This document shows, piece by piece, positions 37,432-63,106 of a stretch of DNA of 64,000 nucleotides. Numbering within the stretch: position 1 is the stretch's first letter; every line of letters starts with the position of its first letter. The stretch is from NCBI GenBank assembly GCA_964247055.1, contig OZ176053.1, forward strand, positions 3,348,001 to 3,412,000. The letters run 5' to 3'. Made by a program: the position numbers and the translations under genes. The notes under the pieces were generated by a model. The model had not been told where the DNA came from and ran no database searches. It saw only the letters and a program-made list of their open reading frames with translations. The stretch comes from Paragordius varius (lineage: Eukaryota; Animalia; Nematomorpha).

Positions 37432-39336
37432 TCAATCCGCCTCATTCCTCGGGGAAAGACAACTCCAATCCACAACTTCATATTCATTATACTCTTTCAA
37501 TGGTTTCTCCACCGTTTTTTCTAAAAATGTTAATGGTAGAATTAAATAACCCTTCATAATTTATACATTAATTTAAATAAGAATACATTTATTAGTGGAA
37601 AGAGCTTAAATTTAGTTTTACATCCATCACCTCAAAATAGTATAGAATTATTTATCGCACAATACCGGCTATTTTAGAATAATTAACTGGAGAAATATTA
37701 TTAAAATTTTATGGACAAAATTTGCGATTTTCGGTTTTATATGATAAAACTTTGTACTTTATTGACTCGTATATTCCAATAAGTCTCAAAAATCTTATCC
37801 TCTATCAAGATTTTAACTACATTTTTTTCACATCTTATTTAGACTTTTTACTGTTTTTAATTTAAAAAATATTAAAATAGATTGAATTTTTATAATATAA
37901 GCTTTCAGTGGTAATTTTACTATTTATCACAAATTTATATAAATTTCGACACAATTGTTAGCTCATAACCAACGAATTCTATCGTTTAAGCAAAATCCTC
38001 TAAATATTTATATATTAAAAATAAAACAACCTGAAAATATCGACTTCCGATCATCTTCCCCTTCGTCAGCAAAAAGTTTCGCATAAATTTCCTCCACTTC
38101 GGAAAAAGAATCTAAAAAATAAAATTATATCATTTATAACCTTAAATTGGCACAATTCATATCAATTGCAAATTTAAACTTTAAGAATGATTTTAATAAA
38201 AATAATGAGCTATTTTAATAAAAATCAAGATTTTAAAAATATGACTGTCTTTTAAAAAAATATTTGTGCTCACAATCTGATAATTTTATTTTTTAAACAA
38301 ATATCAACCTGAAGATATCGACTCCCAATCATCTTCATTTTCAACTTGGTCATCAACTTTATTATTTAAAAGTTTTTCATAAATTTTCTCCACTTCGGGA
38401 AAAATATCTAAAAAAACATAAAATTAATTTATTTAAAATTATACAAAATGAGTTGTAAAAAATGTTGATTAACAATTTTGGTATTTTACTTGGAGAAGAG
38501 ACAGGACTGACCGGAGTCCATGAATGGTATTGTTTGACTTCACTGAAAGTGACACTCTTTTTTGGCTCTATTTATATATAAACATTTTTATTTTATGGTA
38601 TATAGTAATTTTGATTAAATATATTTTTCAAAATATTTAGCTTATTTTTCATATGGTAATGTATTGTTGATAATATTAGATTTTAAAATCTCACTTGGAT
38701 CCGAAGGTACCTCGGGATGACTTTCCAATCTTTCCCCTTCGTTATTTTTCTTAAAACAGCAAAAAGATATGCGGCATAGATATTTTCTCCAGCCTGTAAT
38801 ATTAATATTTATACTTTATGAATAAAAATGAAAATACCGATTCGGTTTTCGGATATTTAATATAAATAACTGAATTTCGGTCAATGTTAGTAATTAAAAT
38901 ATATATATATATAAAATGATTATTGCCATCACTTAACTTTAAACTTATATTCTGGTCAATAAATATTGTCGAGCCAAATTTTAACAAAAGAATTAAGCCA
39001 ATCAGAATCTATTTAGATCTACCAAAACTACTTAATATTAAACATAAATATAATTTTAATTTGGCAATAACATAAAATCATTAAACTTCCAATTCCAACT
39101 AATCTATGTTATAAATTATGTTTAAACATTAATCTAAGATTTTAAAATTTTGAATTTTTATTTTAGGAAAAAAGGTTAGATGTATTTAAAGAAATATCAT
39201 TGATAAATTTCATCATTAATTTGCTGTTGTGGAAAATTTTGGAAAAAAATTGATATATATGCATACCCTTTCCCTTCTCTTGGATTTCACCGCCATTCGT
39301 CGTTTTCAAATTGAATATCCTTGTAAAAAATTTCAT
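37432..39336 (-). CDS. Tandem family copy 1: uncharacterised 171-aa protein with Cys cluster, KSVTF motif and acidic repeats
   Basis: Exons 39336-39267, 38793-38695, 38567-38490, 38407-38309, 38111-38031, 37520-37432; all introns GT-AG, phase 1. Protein MKFFTRIFNLKTTNGGEIQEKGKGWRKYLCRISFCCFKKNNEGERLESHPEVPSDPKPKKSVTFSEVKQYHSWTPVSPVSSPNIFPEVEKIYEKLLNNKVDDQVENEDDWESISSDSFSEVEEIYAKLFADEGEDDRKSIFSEKTVEKPLKEYNEYEVVDWSCLSPRNEAD*. Confidence 0.88.
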
Positions 39337-39380
39337 AAATTTTGATAATAAAAGTTTTTTTTAAAAAATATTTTTGTAAA

Positions 39381-39460
39381 ATAGCAATGCGAGAGTGTTA
39401 AAAAGTGATTGTTGCTAAATAGAATATAAATATAGGCTTAGGCAGTATGATACCTTATAA
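39381..39460 (-). promoter_or_regulatory. Conserved upstream block (putative core promoter / 5' UTR) of the tandem family
   Basis: ATAGCAATGCGAGAG..AAAAAGTGATTGTTGCTAAATAGAAT..ATAGGCTTAGGCA.TATGA.AC.TTA recurs ~45-125 bp upstream of all four ATGs (also ~51440, ~57830, ~63150), while neighbouring sequence is more diverged. Confidence 0.55.
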
Positions 39461-40009
39461 GATGATTGTTGTCATATAAAATATGGGCTTATAAGTATAT
39501 ATAAAAAGTGATAAAGTTTATCTCAATTCGATTATGCATTTGCTAAAATTTAAACACTCAATTAAAAATGGATTTTGCACTTATAAGCAAAAAGGTAAAC
39601 ACATCGATATCTAAAATATAGAGTCTTCTCAATTAGGAAAATAATCAGCCTTTAAGAAAAATAAGAATTTATTTTAAATTATGCCATTTAAATATTATAA
39701 ATTTTAACATTTAATCCATATGATTTTTAAAAGGGTGCTCAAAAATATAAACCCGCTTTAACTATTTTTTATGTTTTAATATGAAAATAGATGTGCATTT
39801 TATTTAGAAAAATTGTTTAAAAATAAAAATTTTATTAAGATTTTATGAGCTTTTTGCAAATTATGGATTTCCAAACCTTTCGCGAACCGCGCGTTGGACA
39901 CCCCTCTTTTATACGAATTCGTTAACAGATACGTATTAGTTATACCTCACTATTAATTAGATGGCTCATAATTTTACGTAATATGTAAATTATTATTATC
40001 TGTCTATAT

Positions 40010-42738
40010 CAGGGGTGGCCCCACTTTTTTTGTCGCGAGCTTTTTTTTGGCTTTTTTGTTAAAAAAAGAGTTCGCGGTCACCCAGAAATATTTATCAAAA
40101 AAAACTCAATCAACACTTTAAATGATGTATATACCTGCTTTACAGATTAGAGTGACTTGTTTAAACCATTTTAAAATTGTAATTTTTTTATCTATCAACC
40201 AAATACAAAAATAATTTTAATTAAAAGACAACGGGTTATTAACTAACTTAATTTTTTAACCAACATAAAACACTTCAAAATATTTATTTATTAAATTTCT
40301 ATTATATGAAATTTTACAATATAAAAATTTAAACAATGCATTTGAAATTACAGGGGAGAATACATTATGATACAAAAAATAAAAGAAATAAAAAATAGCA
40401 TTCCAATTTAGAACCATAATTTGAACATAAATAAGAGTACATTAAAATTGTATCAGTTTTAATTCTATCCACATATTTTTTAGTAAATCGGCTTTTTCCT
40501 AAGCGAAAATACAACTTGATAAACATCCATATTTAATAAAGAAAAAAATATTTAAAACGCCCGACTGCGAAAAAATTCAGAAAGTTTATCTAAATTAGGT
40601 TCAAATGAAGTCAAAGCAATTCTCAAACATGATTCTAAATGTTTATTAGTTGATTGTGACCTCTGTTTAGTTCTGATAGCATTCATAATTGAAAAAGCCG
40701 ATTCACATAAATATGTGGATCCAAAAAAAGAATTGAATAATGCAGCGGTTTTCCAAATATGGCGGTATTTATCTTTATTTATAAATTTATATATATCTGA
40801 TCCTAATGATTTTAGATGGATATCGCATTTAACATTTATTAATTCCTCTTCCAACTCTGCTAAATTTGGTACACCAAGAAAGTGGCTGAGTTTTTGAGCA
40901 ATATATTCAACATTATTATTATTATTAAATGGGCATGATAAAAAAACGATGTCTTCAAGTTTATTTATAGATGAAAATCGTTTTTCAAAATCATTAATAA
41001 GCAGACCAATATCATCTGCATATTTTTCAAAAGAGAGATTCTCTATTTTTTCAGACACCGCTGCCAGATTAAAAAAATGTTTTAAATCTCGGTTTTTTAA
41101 TTGTGTTTCTACTACTGTTAGTTTCCTTAAAAGATTTTAAAGCACCCATCATATCCATTATTGTTTTATCTTTTCCTTGTAATTGGATGTTTAATTTATG
41201 CAATTTTTCCGTGATATCGCATAAAAATGCAAGATCAAGCAGCCAATCTTGATCTTTCAATTCAGGGTATGAAAATTTAGAATCTCTAAAAAAATTTCTA
41301 TTTGTGGTAAAAGTTGCCTAAAATTAAAAATGCGGCACGACTCAACCACCTTACATCAGTATGTAATAAAAGTTCTCCATATTCCACGCCGCACTCATTT
41401 AACAAAATTCGAAATTGGCGGCGGGACAAGCTTTTTGTTCGAATGGCGTTAACAATTTTAAAACAGGGGTTCATTACATGATGGTATTTTAAAACTTTTG
41501 AACATAAAACTTGATTATGGATTATACAATGGTAATCAATGAACTTGGGAAATGCACTGTGATTTTTACATAAAGCGATAAAGCCGTTGTTAACGCCAAT
41601 CATAGCTGGAGCTCTATCAGTAGTTATAGATGCGAGTTTTACGATGGGAAGTTTCGTATCTGTGATAAATTTATAAAAAGAATCAAAAATATCCTGCCCT
41701 CTGGTTCGTTCGTGGAGAGGTATTATAGTTAATAATTCCTCCTTTGCAGATAAATCACTAAATATCATACGAATAAAAATGCATAATTGGGCGATTCCAA
41801 CATAATCGGTGGACTCATCGAGTTGCAAGGAAAAAAAATACAGTTATTAATATTTTCATGTAAAATTTCATCAAGATTATTACTAATATCTTCAGCCCTG
41901 CGCATAACGGTATTTCTCGATAAGCTCATGCTTTTAATAGCTGTCATAATATTATTTTTGTTATCAAAATTTTCAAATAAAATATCACAAGCGCTAATAA
42001 AGGCTTCTTTAAATATTTCACCATCTTGGAATGGCTTATTGTTCCGAATGAGTATTTCCGCTACCTTGAATGAAGCAATCGTAGCATTTTTAGTCTTTGT
42101 TGTATTTAAGTATGCTACTTTGTGAGGAGGATAATTATTCTTTTAATTCCTTTACTTTAATGTTGCGTTCTTGAGTTTGTAAGGGGTAGTTTTTGGAGTA
42201 ATGTGGATGCATAGATCTATAATGTCTTTCAATATTTGACTTTTTGGGCAAAGCAACAGTACTATTGCATATTAGACAGGTGCATGTTTCATTTATCATA
42301 ATAAAAAAGTATTCATGCTCCCAATCTTTCTTGTATCTGTACAACTTTTTTTGGCTCATTCTAAAGTATAAGTTTTAAAAACCTACTTTTGGTGTATCGA
42401 ATCAAATCTAACTTCACGATTATGCTTCTGATTTATGAATAAGCTTTGCTCAAAGTTTTGATATATTCAAGGGAAATGACTGATTTTAAGTTTTAATGCA
42501 AATGCTCCAAAACATATGAATTATAATTAATAAAATAATTTTTTTACACCCTTTTCTTAGACGTTTTTTTTTAATTTAAACCGTATTTTTTTGTATTTTA
42601 AATTTAAATTCGCTCAGAAGTAGCCAACTATCCGAAAAAAATCAATAAAATTTTTAAAAAAAAAATATTTTCAAGCGGTCACTTTTTGAGTTGTCGCGGT
42701 CACGAAAGTGACAGCGGTCACCTCGTTGGCCACTCCTG
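40010..42738 (-). mobile_element. hAT transposon (Charlie/SPIN/Buster-like), full length 2729 bp, transposase disrupted
   Basis: TIRs CAGGGGTGGCCCCAC / CAGGAGTGGCCAAC (reverse complement of the right end); exact 8-bp TSD GTCTATAT on both flanks. Confidence 0.95.
40552..42359 (-). pseudogene. hAT transposase (GTF2IRD2/ZBED5-like), broken into ~5 ORFs
   Basis: Zn-finger CLIC...IERHY, then LDESTD, ITTDRAPAM, HCIIH, VRWLSR, LAFLCDIT and FGSTYLCESAFS motifs in order. Confidence 0.93.
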
Positions 42739-43085
42739 GTCTATATGGCAACATTTTTATCCAAAATTTAAGCCAATTATGTCATAAGTCTGTAGTCCCA
42801 AAAAAAGTATCATAAAAGCCTTAGATCAGGGGTCTGCAACAGGGTACTCGCGAACCGGTGGCTCATTGAAAGAGTGGCTCTTTGGAAATTTTGAAAAAAA
42901 TTTCTAATTTTTTAAAAAAAATTTTATATGTAAATTAGCAATTTTGTTTTGACATTCAAATTATTTTTAGAAACTTTTAATAAAATTCTTTATTATAAAT
43001 ATCTATCACATGCGTTTAATCATTTATAAAACACTTTTATTCTTGCATGTTATTTCTAACTTCAAGATGATAACTTTCACATTAA

Positions 43086-43654
43086 CACTTCGATTCAAAT
43101 TGGGTTATCTAAATACCCCAGACTTAATTCGAATTAGGTTTTTTAAAAGACTACTGGAGGAAACGGTCCCAATTTAAAATTATGCTTCTATCCTAATAAA
43201 AATAATATAAATAAGCTAAAACATCCAAATAAAACTTAATTTTGAAAAAAAAGTTCCATGTCAAACTACTTCGATTTTTATTTTGCAATTTTTGCAAAAT
43301 ATCGTCTTCATTTAATTTTAAGGGTAATAAAGCTAATTTTTTATTTATATTACATATAACATTGTTTTAAATAGAAAAAGCGGTTTATTTTGTAGTATTT
43401 CAATTTTACCATTGCACATATGTCGCGTTGACGAAATTTTTATTTCTCGGTTTTAGCTTAAAATAAGTAATATCAAGTATTTTTAAAAAAATTTTTTTAT
43501 ATATTTCGGTTTATTAATGTTATACAAGTGCAAAATTTTGCCATGGTTTCGATTCCGTCCATATTTTTTATTAATTTAATTTTAAACAGGCCTGGGGTAT
43601 TTAACTACCCCAATTCGAATCGGAGGACAAAAATGAATGTGTTGCATCGAAGTG
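43086..43654 (-). mobile_element. piggyBac-like MITE, copy 4, nested in the second hAT
   Basis: TTAA on both flanks; homologous to the other three copies. Confidence 0.8.
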
Positions 43655-43807
43655 TTAAATTAAAACATTAAATTACTTGCAAAAAATAGGTATTTAAAAT
43701 AATTTATTTAGCTTTCATACCAATACTGGGAATTATAATTTGGTCCATTGAAACATTAAATTACTTGCAAAAAATAGGTATTTAAAATAATTTATTTAGC
43801 TTTCAAA

Positions 43808-45490
43808 ATGCATATATCTAAAAAATAAATAGAAAATACAATCCCAACTGGGAATTAAAATATGGGTTTAATCAAATTTTCAACAAAGCGGAGTGCATTA
43901 TTTGCAAATTTACGACAAACGGATTTCACGAATATAATTTAAAAAGACATGCCAATACCATGCATTTGGATTTTATTAATATGACTACAGAAATGAAAAT
44001 AATAAAATTAGAATCTTTAAAATATTAATAATCTCCAACCAACAATTTCATTCACGCCTTATCCGATAGTAAAGGCAAGTTATATTGTTGCCAATTTACT
44101 TGCCAAAGAAATGAAGCCTTATTCTCATGGTGAGTTTGTAAAGGAATGCGTACTGAAAATTATAAAATGTCTTTTGCCTAATAAGGTTGAATTAATATCC
44201 AGTATAAGTCTTTCGCCCAATAATATGTGTAGACGATACCATCGCAGAAGAAATTCAACTTTCCCTAAAAGAAAGAATTCAAAATTTGTGGCGTTTTCCT
44301 TGTCATTTGATGAAAGCACAGATATAAACAACATATCACAATTGGTAGTCTTTATTCGAGGGATTGATGAATTTTTTAATAAACAGAAGATATGTTAGGC
44401 TTACTTTCGATGAAAAATACAACTAAGGGAGATGACATGTTTCATGCAATTTAAATATATTGAAAACAATAAATTAAATATGAGGGCGCTATCTTGTTTG
44501 ACCACAGATGGTGCCCCAGCTGTGATGGGAAAAAACAAGGGAACCGTCAAATTATTGTTAAATAAGATGGAATCCGATGGTATTAATATTGACCATATAT
44601 ATATAATGCATTGCATGATTCATCGTGAAAATCTCTGCGCACATGCTCTGACAATGGACAATGTTATGACCGTTGTTATTAAAGTAGTTAATTTTATAAA
44701 ATCTCATGCTTTGAAGTATAGGCAGTTTAAGGAGTTTTTAAAAGAAATTCATTTAGAATATGGAGATCGTATATTTTTTTCAAATGTAAGGTGGCTTAGT
44801 CGAGGGAAATGTCTAAAAAGGTATTATTATTCATTAAAAGAAATAAATATTTTTCTATTGCAGAATAATTATTTGGCAGAGGAATTAACCAATGAAGATT
44901 GGTTGTCAGATTTTTTATGCTTTTCCGTAGATATTACCGAAAAACTAAATCAATTAAATGAATCCTTGCAAAAGCAAGATAATTTAATTGTTGATGCGAA
45001 TAACCATATTAAAGCGTTTTGTAAAATTGACGTTATTTGAATGCCATTTAAAAAAATAATGCTGAACATTTTCCAGAATTTAATAGATTTAAAGCTGGTA
45101 AAACTAACATTTTTTCAAAATATGCAGATCAAATCATATTATCAAAAGCTTTTAATAAACGGGGATATGACAAAATATGAAAAAATATTTGATTTATTTT
45201 TTTGTCCATTCGTTGAAGCTATCAACGCTCCTATTAATTTAAAAATGGAATTACTAGATTTGCAATCCAATAATAAATTAAAATTATTATTTGAACAAAT
45301 AAAATTAAATTTTATAAAAAATATGTAACGTTTGATAAATATCTAATTTAAGAATTTTTGCACAAAGATTAATTTGTGCTTTTGGGTCCACTTTGTGAAA
45401 GTTTTTTTTCTGAAATAAAATATACAAAATCTCTTTAACGTTCTTTATTAACTGATGAAAACTTGGCGAATGAATTGAGATGTGCTGTAT
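43808..45490 (+). pseudogene. hAT transposase (GTF2IRD2-like), frameshifted
   Basis: RKYNPNWE...CIIC...EYNLKRH, then KPYSHGEFVKEC, FDESTD, TTDGAPAV, HCMIHRENLC, VRWLSRG and SVDITEKLN motifs. Confidence 0.9.
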
Positions 45491-46707
45491 CAAAAATTGA
45501 TGTAGATCTGAATAAATTAAACAAAAAAATTAAAACAAATATCCCATTAAAAATTTAATTATGCAATGAAAAATGTTTATATATTTTATTTTTATTAGAT
45601 AAAAAGGTTACATTTTGGCGATTAAATCATAGTCTACTCTAGTCATACTATCGAATTGCAATAAGTTTACCATATCAATCTATTTTTATCTTTTTTTACA
45701 CATTGGTATAACAATTAGCAAAGCATTATTATATTTATACTGTTTATTTTCCTTTTGATATGAAAATTAGCACATCTATACGTTAATATAATAAATTTAT
45801 GTTACCAATGTCTTGATATATATATAAATAAAAAGTGGCTTTTTGGAATTTTGAGGTCGAAAAGGTGGCTCTTCAAGCCATTTGTGTTGGACACCCCTGT
45901 GCTAAAACACATCCGCCTTTGTGCCAATTATAAAAAAATCTTTAAGTTCACGGTCAAAATTAAAAAATATTTTTGATAAATGGATATTAATGATTTTTAT
46001 ATTATTTTTTATATTCCATTTTCTTCAAATCTCAATTTTGTAAATATTTTATATACTTTAATAAAACCTGTTTGAAAATTGATAATGAATTATACTTTTT
46101 AGCAACATAATATATTTTAATTATATATAAACACCCCTGTAAGACTTATAATTCACAATGCTTCACTTCATGCAACTCAGATCGATTTTTGTAAAAAAAA
46201 TCATGTTAAATAAACACTGTTGTGGACTAAACATTTTTATCCGAGTATATATTTTTTATCTTCTAAGAAATATGTAATACTAAATAGAATAAGTGGTAAA
46301 GTAAAGTTTTTTTATGCACGCCCGCTTTCCGGGGTGAAAATACGGCCGAAGTCATTTGTGTTGGACACCCCTGGACTAATAGCTTAAAAGAACGGCTTAA
46401 TTTAATAAATTGTCTAAATTATAATCGGTGCATTCATAAATGACCAAATATTTTCCATTTTTGGATTCGATACAGGAGTAATTACTTTCAAATCAAACTT
46501 TTTTTCTAATTTCGTATCAGCTTATTAAATTAATTGGCCGACTATAAGCAGCAATTTAATAAGATATAATCCCTAAAATTGATATGAAATAAGCACCATG
46601 TTATCATTATGATTTTTAACGAGGCGGAGGAAGATGAGTCAACCAACAAGATTCGATACCAGGTAAGGAAATCTCAAAAAGACATTGAAAAAATTAACTT
46701 TCTAACG

Positions 46708-46978
46708 CAGGGGTGTCCACAAAGGGCTTTGCGGGCCGCATTTGAAAAATATATGGGCATTCATAAATATTCTATTTAGTGAAGAACTGTAATATGAAAA
46801 AAAAACAATATACTTTTATTTATTTCACCAATTTTTGCATTGGCTAATTTTAATGACATATTATATTAAGAAATTTATCTAAATTAAGACTTTATCAGCA
46901 TATTTTTGAAAATTATGAAAATCTTATGTATTTGCTAATTTTCCAAAGTTTTAGCGAGCCGCATGTTAGCCGCTCCTG
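46708..46978. mobile_element. hAT-type MITE (271 bp); family ends also at ~3640-3662, 7858, 22557-22578, 39890, 46350, 52010 and 53240
   Basis: CAGGGGTGTCCAC...GCGGGCCGC left end and GCGAGCCGC...CTCCTG right end; flanks TTCTAACG / TTCTAGCA resemble a decayed 8-bp TSD. Confidence 0.7.
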
Positions 46979-47989
46979 TTCTAGCATATTAAGTTTTTTT
47001 TTAGGTTTTAATATTATAAATGTGGATATTAAATTTTTGAATTGATGCTAAAACGTGGCGGACACAGATGCAAAATTCAGATTATTGCGCAAAAAAATTA
47101 ATATACTCGTGAATTTAATGAGCTTTTCTTGAATTTTCTAGCATATTGATTTATAATAAGAGTTAGGCTTTACTAAAAGGGACCAATTAATTAATTAGAA
47201 TAGACCATTTACAAAAGAAACGTTAATATAAATCTAAAACAACGGACCTCCTAGCATATAGCTTTAATATAACATGTAGACGTATTTTATACTCTAACCC
47301 AATTCTAATTTAAAAATGCAAATTCTAAATTAAACCTAAGAGAAATACTTATGATCATATTTTGTCATACTTTTATTAATTATTTAAAGTTTTTTTTTCC
47401 AAAACCCTATACATGGTTAGAGCTAAACCTAGAGATTTATAAAACATAAGTTGGGCTACCCGCGATGCCTTTTTTAATGAATATAAATTATCCATTTTAT
47501 TTGAATGAGCCTACTCGTTTTACAGAATTTTGACTAAAATCCAACTTTCTTTATTTTTATAAATTAAATTTCAATAGCTGTGTATAATTTAAAGCTCTCT
47601 ATAACTTCTGATGCCGTTACATTTTTCGAAATGATATAAATAATCAGTTTAGCTTGCTTTTCCTAAAGAGTAGGATTTTATATTTTTAAAGGACTTTAAG
47701 TAAGCTTTACATTTTGCCTAGGGACAGTCATTATGAAAAAAGGCGGACTTTTATCTTCAAAAGGTCAATTTAACCAGGTTAAAGATAATTTTTTTCCTTT
47801 TGCCATAGAAATTGAAGCAATCATAATGGATTTATGTAAATTTTCCCTAGTAATCTTCTCAATTAAGATTATAACATTTAGAACCGATACATGCAGAACT
47901 TAAAAAATAAATCGTTTTAAGTTAAAATAAGATAATTTATTTGTTATTTTAAAACTTTATACATAAAATTAACATTATGAATATCACAT

Positions 47990-48870: not shown

Positions 48871-48909
48871 AAAAATAAAAAAAATTAATTATTTATGTTC
48901 CCCGAATCA

Positions 48910-51394
48910 TCAATCCGCCTTATTCCTCGGGGAAAGACAACTCCAATCCACAACTTCATATTCATTATACTCTTTCAATGGTTTCTCCACCGTTTTTTCT
49001 AAAAAATTGAATGGTAGAATTAAATGACTTTTCATAATTTATACATTAAGTTGTATAAAAGAAAAATTATTTGAGGAGAGAGATTATCAGGGTTACACCC
49101 ATCACCTCGAAATAGTATTAAAATTATTTTTCGCATAATCCCGGCTATTTTGCAATAATTGACTGGGGAAATATTAGTGACATAATATGGGGAAAATTTG
49201 CGATTTCGGATTTAATTATGATAAAAATTTGTTAGTAAAATGAGTCAAAAATCTTATTTAAGCCTAAATTCACACTCATTCAAACTCTCCACCATACATT
49301 TCATCTACTGATCATTAAACCTATATTTACACTATTCATCATTTATATACTCTAATTTTATTCTTTACATTATTTATTACATCCCACACCTGCCTACACT
49401 TACAAACAAATCCAACCTATCTACTCACTCTTCACATCCAATCACATTTATCTTTTTACATTACATCACACTCATCTTTTAAATAACGCTTTTTTGAATT
49501 CTTTTTATTTATATTGGATTTGGATTCGTTACTTTTATGACATTTTTTGATATTTTGGATACCTCAAACACAACACTTTTGCTTCAACCACATCACATAT
49601 TCTTATTACTCTTTTTTATGTTAAATATATTAAAATTTCGAAATTTTTAATTTTATATAATATAAACTTTCATGGTAATTATTGACACATTTTGTCAACT
49701 TTTAAGCAAAATCCTCTTAATACTCAACATTAAATATAATTAGAAGATATCGACTTCCGATTATCTTCACCTTCGTCAGCAAAAAGTTTCGCATAAATTT
49801 CCTCCACTTCGGAAAAGGAATCTAAAAAAATGAAATTATATTATTTATAACCTTAAAATGAGTTTTGGCACAATTCATATCAATGGCAAATTTAAACTCT
49901 AAAAAAACTCTTAATAAAAATGATGAGCTTTTTAATTAAAATCAAGATTTTTTAAATATGATTGTCTTCTGAAAAAATATTTGAACAACCTGAAGATATC
50001 GACTCCCAATCATTTTCAACTTGGTCATCATCTTTATTATTTAAAAGTTTTTCATAAATTTCTTCTACTTCGGAAAAAGAATCTAAAAAAAATATTATAT
50101 TGTTAACATTGATGTTCGGATTATTACCGATTGCGAAAAATGTTAACTTTTCAAATGCTCTTATTAAAAATATACCGATAATGTAAAACTAAAAGACAAA
50201 TATATTTACAAATGTAACCATACTTATTTAAACCTTGATTAAAGTATATATTTAAGTGTATGAACAATTTTCTGATACCAATTTTAACCAATATAATGAG
50301 TTTTTATAGATGTTTTAAAAAATATATATTTTAATTTTCACTGTTCGTTTAATTTCATTTTAAAAATAAATGAAACCTGAAGATATCGACTCCCAATCAT
50401 CTTCATTTTCAACTTGGTCGTCCTTATTATTTAAAAACTTTTCATAAATTTCCTCCACTTCGGGAAATATATCTAAAAACATAAAATTAATTTATTTAAT
50501 ATTATACAAAAGGAGTTGTAAAAAATGTTTATTAATAATTTTGGCATTTTACTTGGAGAAGAGACAGGACTGACGGGAGTCCATGAATGATATTGATTGA
50601 CTTCACTGAAAGTGACACTCTTTTTTGGCTCTATTTACATATAACATTTGTATTTTATGGTATATAGTTAGATTGATTAAATATATTTTTTGAAATATTT
50701 AACTTATTTTTGTGTATGGTAATGTATTGTTGATAATAATAATTAAAATCTCACTTTGCTCCGAAGGTACCTCGGGATTACTTTCCAATCTTTCCCCTTT
50801 GTTCTTTTTGTTAAAACAGCAAGAAGATATGCAGCATAGATATCTTCTCCAGCCTGTAATATTAACATTAATACTTTATGGTCATAAATAAAATGAAAAT
50901 ACCGACTTGGAACTTTTAAAGTTATATAAATATCTGAATTACGATCAATGTTAGTAATTAAAATATATATATAAAATGATTAGTGCCATCAACTTATATT
51001 GTGGTCAATAAATATTGTCAAGCCAACTATTAACAAAAGAATCAAGTTAATGAGAGTTTAAATTCTAGATTTATTATAAACCAAAGCTATTTAATATTAA
51101 ACATAAATATAATTGTAAGTTGGCAATAACAGTGTAAAAGCATTATTCCAACTAATCGGTAATATAAGTACTGTTTAAAACATAAATCCAAAATTTCGCA
51201 ATTTTAAATTATCTAATATTTTTAATTTTACATTTATTTGACAAAGTTAAATGTATCTAACGAATTTTATTATAAATTTTCTGTTTTTGTGAAATATTTT
51301 TGGAAAAAAAATGTTATATGTGCATACCCTGTCCTTTCTCTTGGGTTTCGCCACCATTTGTCGTTTTCGCACCGAATATCCTTCCGAATTTCAT
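48910..51394 (-). CDS. Tandem family copy 2
   Basis: Exons 51394-51328, 50853-50755, 50630-50553, 50472-50377, 50082-49990, (49821-49741, GT donor lost), 48998-48910. The frame stays intact if the donor-less exon is skipped; motifs YLCCISSCCF, KKSVTF and two DDWESI are present. Confidence 0.8.
49268..49600. repeat. Inverted fragment of the compound repeat inside the last intron of copy 2
   Basis: Its reverse complement matches the repeat (e.g. GAGGTATCCAAAATATCAAAAAATGTCATAAAA, GTAAGTGTAGG, GAGTTTGAATGAGTGTGA). Confidence 0.85.
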
Positions 51395-54179: not shown

Positions 54180-55380
54180 ACATTAACAGTATAATATTAA
54201 GAATTTAATATGTAGTATTTGATGAGTTATGATATAAAGTATGGCGTTAAAAAGGATGGTGTAGTGGTAAATGTGTGTGCATGTGTGTATGTGCGTTTGA
54301 GGGTTGAGTGTTAGAGTGTGAGGCGTGGCATCAAAGAATTCGAATTCATCAATTAAAAAAAGTAATCCAAAATTCAATAAAAAATGAATCCAAAATTATT
54401 TATATAAAAGCAATAATAATATAGATATATGAGAAGTTTGAATAGGTAAAGTTGTAATAAAGATGAGTGCAGGTTGTTAAGTGTTTGAGTAGAGATGGGA
54501 GGTTGAGTGGAGGTTATAAAAAATCCTTATCCAAAAAAGAAAAAATAATCCAAAATCCAAATGTCATAAAAATGGTGATCCAAAAAATGATGTAAATATA
54601 AAGAATCCAATTGTATAAAAAATAGAATATGTAAATGATGAATGTTGTCAAAAAAGGTAATAAAATGTTGATGACATGTGTAAGGGTTGAGAGTGTAGAG
54701 TTGAGTGTGAAGTGATATGTGGTTGAAAAAAAAGGGTTGTGTTTGAGTATCCAAAAATCAAAAAATGTCATAAAAAGTACAGAATCCAAATCCAATTAAA
54801 TATAAAGAATCCAAATCCAATATAAATATAAAGAATCCAAATATGATATATAAAAGATGAGTGTAATATATGTAAAAATATAGTTGATTGGATGTGAAGA
54901 GTGAGTAGAGAGGTATGATTTGTAATAGGTAGTTGTGGGATAGTAGTTTAAAGAATCCAAATGTATAAATAATAGAATATATAAATGATCAGTAGTGTGA
55001 ATATGGGTGTAATGATGTGTAGATGAGATGTATTGTGGAGAGTTTGAATTGAGTATGAGATAAGGGTTTGAGTAAGAGATGTGACAATCCAAAAATCAAA
55101 TAATGTCATAAAAAGTAAAGAATCCAAATATAAAAATAAAAATAAAGAATCCAAAAGTGATTAATAAAGGTATGTGATGTAATGTAAAAAGATAAATGTA
55201 ATTGGATGTAAAGAGTGAGTAGATAGGTTTGATTTGTAAGTGTAGGTAGGTGTGGAATATAAGTTTGACAAAGATGTAGAAGTAGAAGGAATCCAAATAT
55301 GTAAAGGAATAAAATGCATAAAAAATCCAAAATATATGATAAAAGATGAAACAAGTAATAAAATGTTGAAGAAATATTAA
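54180..55380. repeat. Compound repeat downstream of family copy 3
   Basis: Same alternating blocks as the other copies. Confidence 0.85.
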
Positions 55381-55427
55381 AAATAAAATTATTATAGTTG
55401 AAGAATTTTTTTGTGTTCCCCGAATCA

Positions 55428-57778
55428 TCAATCCGCTTCATTCCTCGGGGAAAGACAATTCCAATCCACAACTTCATATTCATTATACTCTTTCAATGGT
55501 TTCTCCACCGTTTTTTCTAAAAATGTTAATGGTAGAAATAAGTAAGACCTCTAAGTTGAATAGGAGTAAATTAATAGAGGAAAGAGTTTAAATTTAGTGT
55601 TATATCCATCACCTTAAATTAGTATTAGAATTATTTATAGCACAATCCCGGTTTTTTTGTGTTTTTGAAAGCGCTAACCCATTTTACGGGTTTTAAAATG
55701 TGAGGCTGTTAAGCTTATATGTATTTAATGCACATATAAGCTTATTTATTTTACAATAAATAATTGGGGAAATATCAGTAACATAATATGGGCAAAATTT
55801 GCGATAATCGGATTTAAATATGATAAAAGTTTGTTGTTCTAAAATAACTCGTAAATTTCAACACTTTAAGTCTGAAAAATTTTATACATTTTCACATATT
55901 CTTATTTAGACTTTTTACTGTTTTTTATAATTTTAAAATTATCAAAATAGATTTAGTTTTTATAATATAAGCTTGCGGTATTTATTATTTTTATAACAAT
56001 TTAAATAAATTTAGACATATTTTGTATCAGATCAAAACGAGGGAATTCTAAGTTTTAAGCAAAATCCTCTATTCATATATTAAAAATAAAACAACCAGAA
56101 GATATCGACTTCCGATCATCTTCACCATCGTCAGCAAAAAGTTTCGCATAAATTTCCTCCACTTCGGAAAAAGAATCTAAAAAAATAATATATTATTTAT
56201 AACCTTAAGTTGGCACAAATCATATCAATTGCAAATTTAAACTTTAAGAATTTTTAATAAAAATAATGAGCTATTTTAATAATAATCAAGATTTTAAAAA
56301 TATGGCTGTCTTTTAAAAAAATATTTGTGTTCACATTATGTATGATAATTTTATTTTTTAAACAAGATCAACCTGAAGATATCGACTCCCAATCATCTTC
56401 ATTTTCAACTTGGTCATCTTTATTATTTAATAGTTTTTCATAAATTTCCTCCACTTCGGAAAAAGAATCTAAAAAATAAATTTAATATAAAATGAGGTTA
56501 GGATCCGATTACAACAAATTTTAACTTTTGAAATGCTCTTATATCATTAAAAATATAGCGAGAATGTAAAACTAAAAGATAGACATATTTTACAAATGCA
56601 ACCATACTTAGTTAAACCTTGATTTAAGTATATATTTAAGTGTATTAACAATTTTTCTCCGATACCTATTTTAACCTAAATGATGAGCTATTTTTTATAG
56701 TTATTTAAATATATATATTTCAATTTTCACCTTTTTTCCGTATAATTTTATTTTTTAAAAAAAATGCAACCTGAAGATACCGACTCCCAATCATCTTCAT
56801 TTTCAACTTGGTCGTCTTTATTATTTAAAAGTTTTTCATAAATTTCCTCCACTTCGGGAAAAATATCTAAAAAAACGTAAAATAATTTATTAAAAATTAT
56901 ACAAAATGAGTTGTAAAAAATGTTTATCAATAATTTTGGTATTTTACATGGAGAAGAGACAGGACTGACCGGAGTCCATGAATGGTATTGATTGACTTCA
57001 CTGAAAGTGACACACTTTTTTGCCTCTATTTATATATAAACATTTGTTTTTTATAAAATATTTAGCTTATTTTTATGTATGGTAATATGTTGATGATAAT
57101 ATTAGATTTTAAAATCTCACTTCGCTCCGAAGGTAAATCGCGATTACTTTCCAATCTTTCCCCTTCGTTCTTTTTCTTAAAACAGCAAGAAGATATGCAG
57201 CATAGATATCTTCTCCAGCCTGATTAACATTTATACTTTATGGTTGTATATAAAATGAAAATACTGATTCGGTTTTTGGAAATTTTAGAGTTATATTAAT
57301 AAATGAATTTTGGTCAATGTTAGCAATTAAAATATATATAAAATGATTATTGCCATCATTTAACTTTAAACTTATATTGTGGTCAATAAATATTGTCAAC
57401 CCAACTTTTAACAAAAGAATCAAGTTAATGAGAGTATAAATTTTAGATTTATTATAAACCAAAGCTATTTATATTATTAAACATAAATATAATTGTAAGT
57501 TGGCAATAACAGTGTAAAAGCATTTAAGTTTCAACTAATCAAAGTTATGTTATGTTTCAAACATTAATCTATTTTAAAATTTTGATTTATTTTATTTTCC
57601 ATTTATTTAAAAAGGTAAATGTATTTAACTAAATATCATTGATAAATTTTATCATTAATTTTCTAATCTTTGTGGAAAATTGTGGAAAAAAATGTTATAT
57701 GTGCATACCCTGACTCTTCCCTTGGGTTTGACCACCATTTGTCGGTTTCACAGTGAATATCCTTGAAAAAAATTTCAT
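55428..57778 (-). CDS. Tandem family copy 3 (7 exons)
   Basis: Exons 57778-57709, 57219-57121, 57025-56948, 56866-56771, 56468-56373, 56176-56096, 55516-55428; all GT-AG, phase 1, no internal stop seen; motif variant KKCVTF. Confidence 0.88.
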
Positions 57779-59569
57779 TAATTTTGATTTTGATAATGAA
57801 AGTTTGTTTTAAAAAATATTTTTGTGAAATAGTAATGCGAGAGTTTTAAAAAGTGATTGTTGCTAAATAGAATATATCTATAGGCTTAGGCAATATGAGA
57901 CCTTAAAAATGATTGTTGTTACATAAAATGTAGGCTTTTAAGTATATAAAACGTGATAACGTTTTTTCCATATATTTTTAAACTTTCAATAATAACCAAA
58001 TTTGATGATGCATTCGCTAAAATATAAACCCGCATTTTAAAAATTGGATTTTACACTTATAAGCTAAAGGGTAAATATTGGTGTCTAAAATATAAAACTC
58101 TATAAAGAAAATCTAAACCTTGAAAAATAAGAAATTATTTTAAATTCCATTAAAATATTATAAATTTATACATTTTAGAGGCCATGTTATATTTAAAAGG
58201 GTACTTTAATACTTAAACTCGCATTGGCTAAGTTCTATGTTTTAATCGGAAATACAACAATGAAAATATTTTAGGTCATAATAAAATTCTATATCAATAT
58301 AAACTTGGTTTTTTCCGTTTTTTACCGGAATTAAGAAATGATTGAAAGCGAACGACGACAGGGGGAACTCGCGATATAATAGGCCCTCATATTTGCAAAG
58401 CATGTTAATGAGGCGTTTTTTCGTTAGACATGAATTGGGAATTACTTACATTTGGTAAAAAAGAACATTATTTAAACATTTAATTTTTACAGTTTTGTGA
58501 CATCTAGAGTCTAAAACTGGGCCAGCTCCGAAACCCGATTGGAACGAATTGATATTAAAATAAAAATATATCAAATTTTGCTGGCAAAATGCAGTTTGAA
58601 ATCTTTTCAAAAATATAGGAAAAAATGGCGGCATTTTATACTTTTACATTTTAAAAATTCTTTTTTATATAATGCCTCAGAGGCTAAATAAAAGCTTATT
58701 TTTAGATTCCGCTTAATACCCTAAATACTTTTAAGATATTCAAATTTTGAATAGCTCTGGGATATCAAACTACCCCAAAAGGTATAGTGTTAATAATCAT
58801 AGCATATACGATATTCGGCAAATAACCTCATTAAATATATTTTTTGTTATGTGAGTGATGCAATAAAATTAAAAAAGTCTAAATTTATGCAGAAAAAGAG
58901 AAATAAGAAAACTGGATATAATTTGTTTAGGGAAGTAAAAAATTAAGGAATATCATACCTCTCACCTAATGAAAATATGAAAGGTAAAAGTTAATTTTTT
59001 ACTACAAAAAGAGATTATATTGAAATCATATGCCATATATGAATTTTAAAAATACTATGTTACAGATATAACAATTTTATATATATCCGTTTGATAATTA
59101 TAATAAAAAAACTTAAATTAACTGAAACTCACTTTCCTAACTTGGTCATCATTTTCCTTACTAAAATATCATAAATTTATTTTGTGTAGATTTTGAATGT
59201 TGAAGCCTCTTTTGCGAAAGCACTGAGTAAAAGGGTCATTAGCCCAAGTCTTGCGGTGAAGTCTAGGATATAGTTCTGCCACTGCTCGAATGGCTACATT
59301 TATAAGGGGTTTGACTTGTCCAAACCCCAATTTATTTAAGCAGAAAATAAAATAAATTAAAAATAGGCTAATCTTAGTTTTTACCCCCAAAATGAACGAT
59401 TTTTGTTTAGCAGTAAGGTTTTGATAGAGGGTACTCTTACATAAATTCTAATAAAACACAAAAAAATATTTCTGAAATAAGATAATAGATAGAAATAATT
59501 TATTTGATGCTTTGTAATCATTAACTTTATATATAAAATCAACATTATGAATATAACATAAACAATATA

Positions 59570-60740
59570 ACATTAACAATTCAAAATGTATAGTATTTGA
59601 TGAGTTATGATATAAAGTATGGCGTTGAAAAGGATGGTTTAGTTGTAAATGTGTGTGCGTGTGTGTATGTGAGTTTGAGGGTTGAGTGTTAGAGTGTGAG
59701 ATGTAACATTAAAGAATCCAAATCCATCAAATAAAAAAAGTAATCCAAATATAATAAAAAATGAATCCAAATTTTTTTATATAAAAGCAATAATATAGAT
59801 AGATAGGTGAAGTTGTTTTAAGATGAGTGCATGTATGTGAAGTGTTTGAGTAGAGGATAGATGAGGTTGAGTGTGAGGTATCAAAAATCCAAATCCAAAA
59901 ATAAAAAATAATGCAAAATCCAAATGTCATAAAAAATGATGATCCAAAAAATGATGAAAATATAAAGAATCCAATTGTATGAAGAATAGAATATATAAAT
60001 TATGAATGATATGTTGATGACATGTGTAAGGGTTGAGAGTGTAGAGGTGAGTGTGAAGTGATATGTGGTTGAAGAAAAAGGGTTGTGTTTAAGTATCCAA
60101 CAATATCAAAAATGTCATAAAAAGTAAAGAATCCAAATCCAATATATATAAAGAATCCAAATCCAATACAAAAATAAAGATTCCAAACGTTATTGATGAG
60201 TGTGATATATGTTGAAAGATAAATGTGATGTGTGAAGAGTGAGTAGAAAGGTTTGATTTGTAAGTGTAGGTAGGTGTGGGATGTAAGTAGTTTAAAGAAT
60301 CCAAATGTATAAAAAATAGAATATATAAATGATGAATAGTGTGAATATGGGTGTAATGATGTGTAGATGAGATGTATGGTGAAGAGTTTGAATGAGTGTG
60401 AGATGAGAGGTTTGAGTATGAGATGTGACAATATAAAAATCAAAAAATGTCATAAAAAGTAAAGAATCCAAATCCAATATAAAAATAAAGAATCCATAAA
60501 TGTCAATTAAAAGATGAGTGTGACGTAATGTAAAAAGATAAATGTGGTTGATGTGAAGAGTGAGTAGATAGGTTGTTGTTTGAAGTGTAGGTAGGTGTGG
60601 AATGTAAGTTTGGCAAAGATGTAGAATAAAGAAGTAAAATGAATCCAAATAAGTAAAGGAATAAAATGCATAAAAAAATGCATAATAAAAGATAAAATGA
60701 GCAATAAAATATTGAAGAAATATTAAAAATAAAAAAAATA
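59570..60740. repeat. Compound repeat downstream of family copy 4
   Basis: Same alternating blocks; closest in sequence to the copy 1 tract. Confidence 0.85.
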
Positions 60741-60776
60741 ATTATAGTTGAAGAATTTTTTGTGTTCACCGAATGA

Positions 60777-63106
60777 TCAATCCCCCTCATTCCTCGGGGA
60801 AAGACAACTCCAATCCACAACTTCATATTCATTATACTCTTTCAATGGTTTCTCTACCGTTTTTTCTAAAAATGTTAATAGTAGAATTGAATTACTCTTC
60901 TAATTTATACATTAATATGTATAAAAGAAAATTTATTAGATGAAAGAGTTTAAATTAGTTTTATTTCCATCACTTCAAAATAGTATAGAATTTTTTATTG
61001 CTACCGACTTTTTTGTTTTTTAAGCACTAACCCATTTGGGTTTTGAAATGTGAGACTGTTAAGCTTATATGTAAATAATGCACATATTATGATATATTTT
61101 AAAATAATCAAATGAAGAAATATTATTAACATAATATGGGCGAAATTTGCGATTTTCGATTTATACTTGAATGACTCGTAAATCCCAACACTTTACGTCT
61201 CAAAAATCTTATACTCTATCAAGATTTAATTACATTTTTTTCACATATTCTTATTTTGAGTTTTTACTGTTTTTTATAATTTAAATTATTATAGTATTTA
61301 ATTTTTTATAATATAAGCTTTCAACGGTAATTTTGCTTTTTATCACAAATTTATATAAATTTCAACACATTTTATATTAGCTCATAACCAGCGAATTTAA
61401 ACTTTTAAGCGAAATCCTCTTAATACTCAACATTAAAAATAAAACAACCTGAAGATATCGACTTCCGATCATCTTCGCCTTCGTCAGCAAAAAGTTTCGC
61501 ATAAATTTCCTCCACTTCGGAAAAAGAATCTAAAAAAATAAAATTATATTATTTATAACCTTAAAATGAGTTTTGGCACAATAAACATCAATTGCAAATT
61601 TAAACTTTAAGAATCTTAATAAAAATGATGAGCTATTTTAATTTAAATCAAGATTTTATAAATATAATTGCCTTTCGAAAAAATATTTGTGTTTAAGTTA
61701 ATTTTATTTATTATACTAAAAACAACCTGAAGATATTGACTCCCAATCATCTTCATTTTCAACTTGGTCATCATCTTTATTATTTGAAAGTTTTTTATAA
61801 ATTTCCTCCACTTCGGAAATAGAATCTAAAAAAATATATTATAGTTAACATAAAAATGAGGTTCGGATTTATACCGATTGCCACAAATTTTAACTTTTCA
61901 AATGAACTTATATCATTAAAAATTGGAATATACCGAGAAAATGTAAAACTTTTACAAACGTTATACTTATTTAATACTTGATTTACAGTTTTTAGTAACA
62001 TATTAAAGTGTATTAAGAATTTGTATTTAATACCTGATAAGTTATTTTTATGATTGTTTTAAAAAATATATATATTTTAATTTTCACTGTTTGTATATTT
62101 TCATTTTTAAAAATTAATGGAACCTGAGGATATCGCCTCCCAATCATCTTCATTTTCATCTTGATCGTCTTTATTATTTAAAAGTTTTTCATAAATTTCC
62201 TCCACTTCGGGAAAAATATCTAAAAAAACATAAAATTAATTTATTTAAAATTATACAAAATGAGTTGTAAAAAATGTTGATTAACAATTTTGGTATTTTA
62301 CTTGGAGAAGAGACAGGACTGACCGGAGTCCATGAATGGTATTGATTGACTTCACTGAAAGTAACACTCTTTCTTGGTTCTATTTATATATAAACATTTG
62401 TATATTTTATAAAATATTTATATTATTTTTTTGTATGGTAATATATTGTTGATAATATTAGATTTTAAAATTTCACTTGGCTCAGAAGGTACATCGGGAT
62501 GAATTTCCAATCTTTCCCCTTCGTTCTTTTTCTTAAAACAGCAAGAAGATATGCGGCACAGATATCTCCAGCCTGTGATATTAATTATACTTTATGGTTA
62601 TAAAGAAAATGAAAATACTGACTTGGAAATTTGAGTGATATAAATAACTGAATTTCGGTCAATGTTAGTAATCAAAATATATATAAAATGATGATTGCCA
62701 TCATTTACCCTAAAACTTTTATTGTGGTCAATAAATATTGTCAAGCCAACTTTAACCAAAGAACCAAGTTATTGAAAGTATAAATTTTAGATTTAGTAAA
62801 ACCAAAGCTAATTAAACATAGATATAATTGTAAGTTGGCAATAACAGTGTACATTAACAAATCTGTGTTATAAGTTATGTTTTAAACGTCAATCTAAAAT
62901 TTTATTCAATTATTTTATTTTTTATTTTCATTTATATCAAAAAGGTTAGATGTATTTAACGAAATATCATTAATATATATTATGAATTTGCTGATTTTTA
63001 TGGAAAATTATGAAAAAAAATGTTATATGTGCATACCCTGACTCTTTTCTTGGGTTTCGCCACCATTTGTCGTTTTAACAGCGAATATCCTTGAAAAAAA
63101 TTTCAT
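60777..63106 (-). CDS. Tandem family copy 4 (7 exons)
   Basis: Exons 63106-63037, 62572-62477, 62379-62302, 62219-62124, 61825-61727, 61529-61449, 60865-60777; all GT-AG, phase 1; 3-nt deletion in exon 2; motif variants RKSVTF and DDWEAI. Confidence 0.88.

What the first reader, a model, noticed from the sequence alone, without database searches (positions are those of the whole stretch)
37432..63106. Hidden tandem family of four intact multi-exon genes under apparent purifying selection
Seen: none of its exons appears as a recognisable gene in the ORF track, yet four copies (ATG at 39336, 51394, 57778, 63106) share exon order, GT-AG sites and phase-1 introns. Every exon length difference is a multiple of 3 (70/67, 99/96, 99/96/93/81), while introns and spacers vary freely. 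No known family recognised. Inference: an actively maintained, lineage-specific, recently amplified gene family that may continue beyond the window.
Basis: partly seen in the sequence, partly recalled or inferred. Interest (0 to 1): 0.85.

Follow-up and report, generated by a model that had tools for sequence, protein, structure and literature searches.

The report
Hidden orphan gene family, PP1-docking motif
A cluster of small multi-exon genes found only in this horsehair-worm genome is real and is being kept intact by selection. Its best-conserved piece looks like the classic docking site for protein phosphatase 1, but neither expression nor binding could be shown here.

Summary
Four minus-strand copies start at ATG 39336, 51394, 57778 and 63106. 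They share six or seven short exons, and every intron is in phase 1.

Selection on the reading frame is supported:
- Exons are 92-94% identical, introns 79-87%.
- All 5 exon length changes are multiples of 3, against 66 of 190 in introns.
- Variable sites by codon position are 27/21/46.
- Omega is 0.37 (LRT against 1: 21.5).

- Copy 2 has lost the GT donor of its penultimate exon, so "four intact" is too strong.
- The family is not very young: whole-gene identity is 82-90% and dS is 0.07-0.22.
- It extends beyond the finding. There is a decayed relic at about 33.7-34.95 kb. Two intact 170-aa copies lie 35-46 kb past the window end, as the mirror image of the copy1-copy2 block. An intact 171-aa paralogue lies 9.3 Mb away (48% identity, dS about 1, same intron phases).

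A profile of the most conserved exon finds about 19 loci in this genome. Nothing was found in Pfam, the PDB or two very large protein libraries. That exon reads K-S-V-T-F, five residues, Y-H, x, W-T-P, which fits the RVxF-PhiPhi docking string for PP1.

The scan noted this family before on other DNA.

The parts
37432..39336 (-). Copy 1 (c1). Intact 6-exon gene of 171 codons. Exons: 39336-39267, 38793-38695, 38567-38490, 38407-38309, 38111-38031, 37520-37432.
   Evidence: GT-AG, all introns phase 1, total 516 nt, frame closed.
48910..51394 (-). Copy 2 (c2). 7-exon copy. Exons: 51394-51328, 50853-50755, 50630-50553, 50472-50377, 50082-49990, 49821-49741, 48998-48910. The canonical donor after 49741 is lost.
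   Evidence: the exon ends CTTCTA|attata; read-through stops after 4 codons; a cryptic in-phase donor lies at 49770.
55428..57778 (-). Copy 3 (c3). Intact 7-exon gene (609 nt CDS). Exons: 57778-57709, 57219-57121, 57025-56948, 56866-56771, 56468-56373, 56176-56096, 55516-55428.
60777..63106 (-). Copy 4 (c4). Intact 7-exon gene (609 nt CDS). Exons: 63106-63037, 62572-62477, 62379-62302, 62219-62124, 61825-61727, 61529-61449, 60865-60777.
38490..38567 (-). Exon 3 of c1, the family's most conserved exon: basic residues, K-S-V-T-F, five residues, Y-H, x, W-T-P-x-S-P. Equivalent exons: 50553-50630, 56948-57025, 62302-62379.
   Evidence: V, F, Y, W, T, P, S and P are invariant across the 11 rows aligned, which come from family A and three other locus groups (C3, C4 12.67 Mb).
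38695..38793 (-). Exon 2 of c1: basic stretch with a Cys cluster (L-C-x-I-S-x-C-C-F). This is the fastest-evolving coding exon.
   Evidence: pN/pS 1.7. The CC..CC cluster is kept in the distant paralogue.
38031..38407 (-). Acidic repeat exons of c1 (E4 38407-38309, E5 38111-38031): E-V-E-E-I-Y-x-K-L ... D-D-W-E-S-I-S-S. There are three such exons in c2-c4.
   Evidence: alignment of 15 repeat exons; pN/pS about 0.2.
33700..34950 (-). Decayed relic copy (c0). Only E3-, E4- and E6-like pieces remain, with a frameshift in E3, a lost donor and TAA in E6. No E1 or E2.
36000..37431 (-). G-poor 3' flank of c1 (sense strand G 6%, C 21%). The same block follows every copy (about 47510-48909, 54028-55427, 59377-60776).
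   Evidence: found only next to family members in the whole genome; gap lengths 20 of 80 multiples of 3, so it is non-coding.
39363..39475 (-). Conserved upstream block of c1 (about -27 to -140 from the ATG) with two CAACAATCA boxes. It is present before all six copies and is the likely promoter or 5' UTR.
49413..49593 (+). Inverted piece of the 3' flank inside the last intron of c2. It pairs with 48533-48713, so the last exon sits in the loop.
   Evidence: The same insertion is in the sister copy c5.
40008..42743 (.). 2.7-kb insertion carrying hAT-like transposase ORFs. It is absent from the mirror copy of this spacer and helps explain the 12-kb c1-c2 spacing.
   Evidence: weak hAT dimerisation match; 40007 and 42744 abut in the mirror copy.

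Best explanation
This is a genuine protein-coding gene family that appears restricted to this horsehair-worm lineage. It is a local subfamily of six full-length copies and one relic, within a superfamily of about 19 loci in this genome. Each gene encodes a protein of about 170-200 aa that is probably disordered. The order of parts is: a basic N-terminus with a Cys cluster, then the conserved exon (basic residues, K-S-V-T-F, five residues, Y-H, x, W-T-P-x-S-P), then one to three acidic repeat exons (EVEEIYxKL...DDWESISS), then a C-terminal exon ending in YNEYEvvDWSxL. Shown here: the gene structure; the constraint on the reading frame; growth by tandem and inverted segmental duplication, and by duplication of symmetric phase 1-1 exons; and the absence of detectable relatives elsewhere. 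Inferred (my odds about 0.45): the conserved exon is an RVxF-PhiPhi-aromatic docking string that binds the catalytic subunit of protein phosphatase 1, making the proteins PP1 regulatory or targeting subunits. More speculative: the Cys cluster is palmitoylated and holds the protein on a membrane, and the acidic Trp motifs (W-x-x-L/I) recruit a partner such as ATG8 or a substrate.
For: Structure: six copies share exon order, phase-1 introns and GT-AG at 32 of 33 introns. Constraint: exon identity 92-94% against intron 79-87%. Exon gaps are 5 of 5 multiples of 3 against 66 of 190 in introns, and there are far fewer gap events per base in exons. Variable sites by codon position are 27/21/46. GY+F3X4 gives omega 0.37, and the LRT against omega=1 is 2dlnL=21.5. 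The relic c0 shows what an unconstrained copy looks like. Deep conservation: paralogue cX at C4:12.67 Mb is intact (516 nt). It has the same exon order and phases and a 78-nt E3, with 48% aa identity, dS about 1.0 and dN/dS 0.38. A conserved upstream block precedes all copies. Docking motif: V and F of the RVxF, the first Phi residue, and W-T-P..S-P are invariant in the 11 rows aligned, from family A, the C3 cluster and C4 12.67 Mb. The profile finds 30 matches in about 19 loci. The pattern fits the published consensus [K/R]-x0-1-[V/I/L]-x(not P)-[F/W], with basic residues before it and acidic residues after it. Human PNUTS uses K-S-V-T-W followed by PhiPhi and Phe motifs (PMC10731240).
Against: No gene-model protein of this family is present in either large protein library, so expression and the exact 5' end are unproven. 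RVxF-type patterns are short and degenerate and occur by chance in many proteins. PP1 binding was neither modelled nor measured here. The pairwise c1-c3 ratio is about 1, and exon 2 has pN/pS 1.7, so constraint is uneven. Gene conversion between copies (mosaic similarities) can distort dN/dS. Copy 2 has lost a splice donor.
Confidence: 0.72

Rival explanations
1. The family is real and coding, but the RVxF-like string is a coincidence or serves another partner. For example it could be a proline-directed phosphorylation module (W-T-P-x-S-P) or another peptide-binding site. In that case the proteins have nothing to do with PP1.
For: The motif is degenerate. The profile found no PDB chain even at E up to 10, and no Pfam PP1-regulator family matched any exon. 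The invariant W-T-P..S-P part is not part of the classical PP1 string.
Against: The invariant positions are exactly those that the consensus requires to be buried (V and F). The middle residue is never Pro, basic residues precede and acidic residues follow, and an aromatic pair lies 5 residues downstream in the 11 aligned rows from three locus groups (consensus from PMC10731240).
Confidence: 0.35
2. The array is a set of decaying duplicates. The apparent constraint would come from young age plus gene conversion, and no functional protein is made.
For: c0 is a wreck. c2 lost a donor. The c1-c3 ratio is about 1. Mosaic similarity suggests conversion. There is no RNA evidence.
Against: The introns of the same copies have diverged 13-21% with many frame-breaking indels, while the exons have none. 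The LRT rejects omega=1. An unlinked paralogue at dS about 1 is still intact with identical phases. Conversion cannot explain the difference between exons and introns within one unit.
Confidence: 0.07
3. The repeat unit is a transposable element or satellite, and the 'exons' are TE-derived sequence.
For: A hAT-like insertion and small dispersed repeats lie inside the array.
Against: The unit and its 3' flank occur only at this locus and its mirror. No exon matches any Pfam TE domain. Only an 80-nt intronic piece is dispersed.
Confidence: 0.03

Closest known systems
PP1 regulatory or interacting proteins that dock through an RVxF-PhiPhi(-Phe/Arg) string, for example PNUTS (PPP1R10), spinophilin and the small Leishmania PNUTS
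   Same: Basic residues, then K-S-V-T-F (human PNUTS has K-S-V-T-W), then an acidic residue, then an aromatic pair 5 residues on, then another aromatic residue two positions later. The protein is small, has no recognisable domain and has low-complexity acidic composition, like Leishmania PNUTS (264 aa, no domain other than the motif; PMC10731240).
   Different: There is no detectable sequence homology to any of them. The spacing between RVxF and PhiPhi is 5 residues, against 8 in PNUTS. The aromatic residue after PhiPhi is Trp and is followed by an invariant T-P-x-S-P. There is a Cys cluster and acidic Trp repeats. The gene is multi-copy.
PPP1R15 / GADD34 and viral ICP34.5-type PP1-binding region (Pfam PP1c_bdg); comparison recalled from memory
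   Same: An RVxF followed at short distance by an aromatic or hydrophobic pair and a Trp. Several two-module relatives read Y-F-R-W, which recalls the RVxF-PhiPhi-R-W string.
   Different: No exon of this subfamily or of three sampled relatives matched any Pfam family. There is no downstream helical eIF2alpha/actin-binding part. I do not file the family here.
Inhibitor-3 / PPP1R11 (small, acidic, RVxF plus Cys-rich stretch); comparison recalled from memory
   Same: Small size, an RVxF-type motif, a Cys cluster and acidic tracts.
   Different: The order of parts differs (here the Cys cluster comes before the RVxF). There is no Pfam match and no sequence similarity was detected.
Lineage-restricted ('orphan') tandem gene families of parasites
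   Same: Clustered, multi-copy, short exons, no relatives in databases, with birth and death of copies.
   Different: Here a specific, testable interaction motif is the conserved core, and a divergent unlinked paralogue dates the family well before the local amplification.

Membership tests
PP1-interacting proteins with RVxF docking (RIPPO/PIP class; a functional class, not a homology family) | RVxF motif [K/R]-x0-1-[V/I/L]-x(not P)-[F/W] | tested here: met
   The motif is K-S-V-T-F in five of the six copies and K-C-V-T-F in c3. Relatives have K-R-V-V-F, R-T-V-R-F and K-K-V-R-F. V and F are invariant and x is never Pro. Consensus from PMC10731240.
PP1-interacting proteins with RVxF docking | Basic residues before and acidic residues after the motif; PhiPhi pair 5-8 residues downstream | tested here: met
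   P-K-K before the motif and S-E after it. Y-H, Y-F or Y-Y sits exactly 5 residues after the F in the family A, C3 and C4 12.67 Mb rows. The 5-8 range is from my knowledge of the PP1 literature.
PP1-interacting proteins with RVxF docking | Motif lies in an intrinsically disordered, accessible region | not tested
   Composition (Ser/Pro/acidic-rich, no Pfam domain) suggests disorder. The spliced protein was not folded because joined models were not to be submitted.
PP1-interacting proteins with RVxF docking | Physical binding to the PP1 catalytic subunit that depends on the V and F residues | not testable with these tools
   Needs pull-down or co-IP, or at least a complex model of the spliced protein with the worm's PP1c.
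PPP1R15/GADD34-type PP1c-binding region and other Pfam PP1-regulator families | Match to the family profile | tested here: not met
   hmmscan of every exon peptide of c1 and cX and of three relatives' ORFs at E up to 1 found no PP1-regulator family.
Functional protein-coding gene (as opposed to pseudogene array) | Open frame, conserved splice sites and phases, omega below 1 | tested here: met
   Five of six copies are fully intact. Omega is 0.37 with LRT 21.5. Exon indels occur only in multiples of 3. The distant paralogue is intact.
Functional protein-coding gene | Spliced transcript exists | not testable with these tools
Transposable element or satellite | Dispersed copies or a TE protein domain | tested here: not met
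   The unit is confined to C4 3.38-3.46 Mb plus one fragment. There is no TE domain in the exons.

The most novel reading that the evidence does not exclude
The proteins are membrane-tethered adaptors. A palmitoylated Cys cluster holds them on a membrane, and they bring PP1 (through the RVxF-PhiPhi-W string) together with ATG8-family proteins or another partner bound by the conserved acidic Trp motifs (D-W-S-x-L, D-D-W-E-S-I). On this reading, a phosphatase-to-autophagy or phosphatase-to-membrane coupling device was invented and amplified to about 19 genes in hairworms only.
Probability: 0.1. Interest if true: 0.6.

Novelty: new member of a known kind. Interest (0 to 1): 0.38.

Why it matters
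Horsehair worms are a barely sampled parasitic phylum, and automatic ORF tracks miss genes built from 70-100-nt exons in DNA that is about 26% GC across the window. This family shows that such hidden genes can be recovered and shown to be constrained from paralogue comparison alone. If the conserved exon really docks PP1, the worm has a private, expanded set of about 19 small PP1 regulators. That would be a tractable case of how new phosphatase-targeting subunits arise from short linear motifs and spread by exon and segmental duplication. The locus itself is a mirror duplication flanking about 36 kb of unique sequence. It is also a clean record of tandem duplication, inverted duplication, exon duplication, transposon insertion and copy death.

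Tried and rejected
I did not try again, and read laying was never used. After the first decline, E3 peptides of c3 and c4 were still part of alignment A5, which I used in an own-genome search and a PDB search.

Known RNA genes: tRNA and Rfam scans of the window found nothing.

Known protein families: Pfam on each exon peptide of c1 and cX and on relatives' ORFs found nothing.

Homologues outside this genome:
- The profile of the acidic repeat exon, run against 1.84 billion representative proteins, gave one hit (P0001). It is a translated simple repeat, and I rejected it as chance.
- The 155-aa open frame of a C3 relative, run against the 5.8-billion-protein collection, gave no hit.
- The PDB profile search was blank.
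- The ESM Atlas search with the 82-aa first exon of cX gave no usable hit.

Joined spliced protein: it was never sent to any search or folding tool. Exons were searched one by one by reference. In scripts, in-frame exon codons (split codons dropped) were put side by side only for within-family codon statistics.

Coding potential of the G-poor 3' flank: the long ORFs there arise only because G is rare. I rejected coding because 20 of 80 gaps are multiples of 3.

TE origin of the unit: rejected.
Full report
WHAT IS THERE

The window (G000:C4:3348001-3412000, 110.5-Mb genome) is about 26% GC. Earlier notes of this scan call the organism a horsehair-worm relative; I did not test this.

A direct-repeat scan shows a unit of about 5.3-12 kb present four times between 36 and 64 kb. 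On the minus strand each unit carries a small gene.

- The exons are E1 (70 or 67 nt), E2 (99 or 96), E3 (78), acidic exons (99, 96, 93 or 81) and a last exon of 89 nt including TGA.
- Copy 1 has six exons (516 nt). Copies 2-4 have seven (603-609 nt), because one acidic exon is duplicated once more.
- Every intron is in phase 1, and 22 of 23 have GT-AG.
- The exception is copy 2. Its penultimate exon ends CTTCTA|attata, and read-through meets TAA after four codons. An in-phase cryptic donor (AAG|GTGAAG) lies 30 nt upstream. "Four intact" is therefore slightly too strong.

IS IT MORE THAN CHANCE, AND IS IT CONSTRAINED?

- Pairwise exon identity is 92-94% against 79-87% for the introns of the same copies.
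- Exon GC is 37-38% against 20-22% in introns.
- In a six-copy alignment, the exons (about 600 nt) hold 5 gap events, all multiples of 3. The introns (about 1700 nt) hold 190, of which 66 are multiples of 3.
- Variable sites fall 27/21/46 on codon positions 1/2/3.
- Nei-Gojobori ratios are 0.23-0.40 for five of the six pairs among the window copies, and 1.03 for c1-c3.
- A codon model (GY+F3X4) on six copies gives omega 0.37 and kappa 2.1. Fixing omega at 1 costs 2dlnL = 21.5.
- Constraint is uneven. The acidic exons, E3 and the last exon have pN/pS of 0.17-0.38. E2, with the Cys cluster, has 1.7.

EXTENT OF THE FAMILY

A DNA search of the whole genome finds more members.

- Relic c0. A decayed copy lies at about 33.7-34.95 kb of the window. 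It has only E3-, E4- and E6-like pieces, a frameshift, a lost donor and an in-frame TAA.
- Copies c5 and c6. Two further full copies lie on the plus strand at C4:3447-3449 kb and 3457-3460 kb. Both are intact six-exon genes of 513 nt.
- One fragment lies at C4:4.887 Mb.

In the whole-gene tree, c2 pairs with c5 (support 100), and c1 groups with c6 against the rest (96). A local comparison shows that the whole block c1-spacer-c2 (window 37.7-51.6 kb) is mirrored, in inverted order and orientation, at 99.1-111.5 kb on the window's scale. Spacer sequence is included.

The array is therefore a tandem series plus an inverted segmental duplication. According to earlier first-reader notes, which I did not check, the unique sequence between the arms includes housekeeping genes.

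A 2.7-kb insertion with hAT-like ORFs (40008-42743) is missing from the mirror copy, so it is younger than the duplication. Whole-gene identities of 82-90% and dS of 0.07-0.22 argue against a very recent burst.

A DEEPER COMPARATOR

Searching the genome with the E3 peptide, and then with a profile (alignment A5), gives 30 matches in about 19 loci:

- this subfamily;
- eight two-module genes on C3 at 1.61-1.94 Mb;
- two on C4 at 11.13 Mb;
- two weak ones on C5;
- one at C4:12.67 Mb.

The last of these (cX, locus L033) has the same architecture as this subfamily.

- Its first exon is a fused E1+E2 of 247 nt, with the K-F-x-x-x-F-N and CC..CC features.
- E3 is again exactly 78 nt.
- It has one acidic exon (93 nt) and a last exon (98 nt).
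- All introns are phase 1 and GT-AG, and the 516-nt frame is intact.
- Against c6 it is 48% identical over 127 codons, with dS about 1.0, dN 0.40 and a ratio of 0.38.

An unlinked copy this diverged that still keeps frame, phases and every module is the strongest single argument that these are working genes. It also suggests that one acidic exon is the older state. The extra acidic exons in the cluster would then arise by duplication of symmetric phase 1-1 exons, with a unit of about 395 nt (family D4).

WHAT THE PROTEIN LOOKS LIKE

The following is read exon by exon.

- The N-terminus has no signal-peptide-like hydrophobic core.
- A basic stretch carries a Cys cluster.
- E3 reads P-K-K-S-V-T-F-S-E-V-x-Q-Y-H-S-W-T-P-V-S-P-V-S-S-P.
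- One to three acidic repeats read E-V-E-E-I-Y-x-K-L ... D-D-W-E-S-I-S-S.
- The C-terminal exon reads ...Y-N-E-Y-E-V-V-D-W-S-C-L...

In the 11 aligned rows of A5 (family A, C3 and C4 12.67 Mb) the invariant residues of E3 are V, F, Y, W, T, P, S and P. V and F are the two residues that the RVxF consensus requires. That consensus is [K/R]-x0-1-[V/I/L]-x(not P)-[F/W], with basic residues before and acidic residues after it (PMC10731240). The aromatic pair five residues later sits where a PhiPhi motif is expected, and the Trp two positions further on sits where PNUTS has its Phe motif. Human PNUTS's own motif is K-S-V-T-W (same paper).

This is a good pattern match to a PP1 docking string. It is not evidence of homology to any PP1 regulator, and it is not evidence of binding.

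COMPARISON WITH WHAT IS KNOWN

- No exon of c1 or cX, and none of three relatives' ORFs, matches Pfam at E up to 1.
- The E3 profile finds nothing in the PDB.
- A profile of the acidic exon, run against 1.84 billion representative proteins, gives only a translated simple repeat, which I discard.
- A 155-aa open frame of a C3 relative finds nothing among 5.8 billion clusters.
- The ESM Atlas gave no usable hit.

By these measures the family has no known relatives. The limitation is that no animal genome collection was searchable, so "restricted to this lineage" means "absent from the protein libraries".

WHAT COULD NOT BE DONE

Transcription, the predicted junctions, the true 5' end and the fate of copy 2 remain untested. 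The decline did not mention human likeness; I report it as it happened. An earlier follow-up of this scan on the C4:11.13 Mb pair reached the same reading: an orphan family of about 19 genes with PP1 docking modules, and neither expression nor binding shown. My census agrees with it, but I ran it before I saw that note.

VERDICT

It needs three corrections: one copy has a broken donor, the amplification is not very recent, and there is a relic and a mirror duplicate.

- Odds that these are working protein-coding genes: about 0.85.
- Odds that the conserved exon docks PP1: about 0.45.

It is a new family of a known functional kind. Interest is moderate, and the scan has found it before on other DNA.

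Noticed in passing
window 36000-37431, 47510-48909, 54028-55427, 59377-60776: Each gene is followed by a block of about 1.4 kb. On the gene's strand this block is almost free of G (5-9%) but has about 20% C, and it is built of GGATT-containing AT-rich pieces alternating with C/A/T-only pieces. In the whole genome it occurs only next to family members. Its gap lengths show it is non-coding. It could be a long 3' UTR.
   Followed up: partly
window 48533-48713 vs 49413-49593 (c2); same in L004 about 3000-3330 (c5): An inverted piece of that 3' flank sits in the last intron of c2 and of its sister c5. The last exon would therefore lie in the loop of a long hairpin if both arms are transcribed. c2 is also the copy that lost the preceding donor.
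   Followed up: partly
window 37671-51649 vs C4:3447087-3459482: The c1-spacer-c2 block is mirrored as c6-spacer-c5, 48-60 kb to the right. This makes a large imperfect palindrome around about 36 kb of unique sequence.
   Followed up: yes
window 40008-42743: This insertion has hAT-like transposase ORFs and sharply defined edges: positions 40007 and 42744 abut in the mirror copy. A second hAT-like ORF (44432-45040, + strand) lies in spacer sequence shared by both arms.
   Followed up: partly
window 43087-43658, 32671-33246 and C4:3416805-3417369: A repeat of about 575 bp is present three times near the array (75-77% identity). One copy interrupts the spacer in the left arm only.
   Followed up: no
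window 56250-56328 (intron before E5 of c3; same place in the other copies): An 80-nt segment of this intron matches at least 40 places on many contigs (75-90% identity). It is probably a small dispersed element.
   Followed up: no
window 39363-39475 and equivalents: The upstream block is conserved better than the introns. It holds two CAACAATCA boxes about 55 nt apart and an AGCAA...TTGCT partial palindrome.
   Followed up: no
L033 (C4:12668500-12672500), minus strand 2259-1408: This is an intact single-copy paralogue with E1 and E2 in one exon (no first intron) and one acidic exon. It is probably closer to the ancestral form.
   Followed up: yes
L031, L032, L034 (C3 1.61-1.94 Mb); L037, L038 (C4 11.13 Mb): Relatives carry two docking-type exons per gene. 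One reads ...K-R-V-V-F-N-E-D-x-Q-Y-F-R-W-T-P..., followed by F-Y-P-E-P-S-W-A-E-I. The second-module exon begins E-K-T-V, like the last exon of this subfamily.
   Followed up: partly
window 29022-31709 (+): Three consecutive long open frames (359, 330 and 150 aa) lie here. The 330-aa one (30220-31212) was scanned against Pfam and had no match; the other two were not scanned. This may be an unrecognised gene or element just upstream of the relic copy.
   Followed up: no
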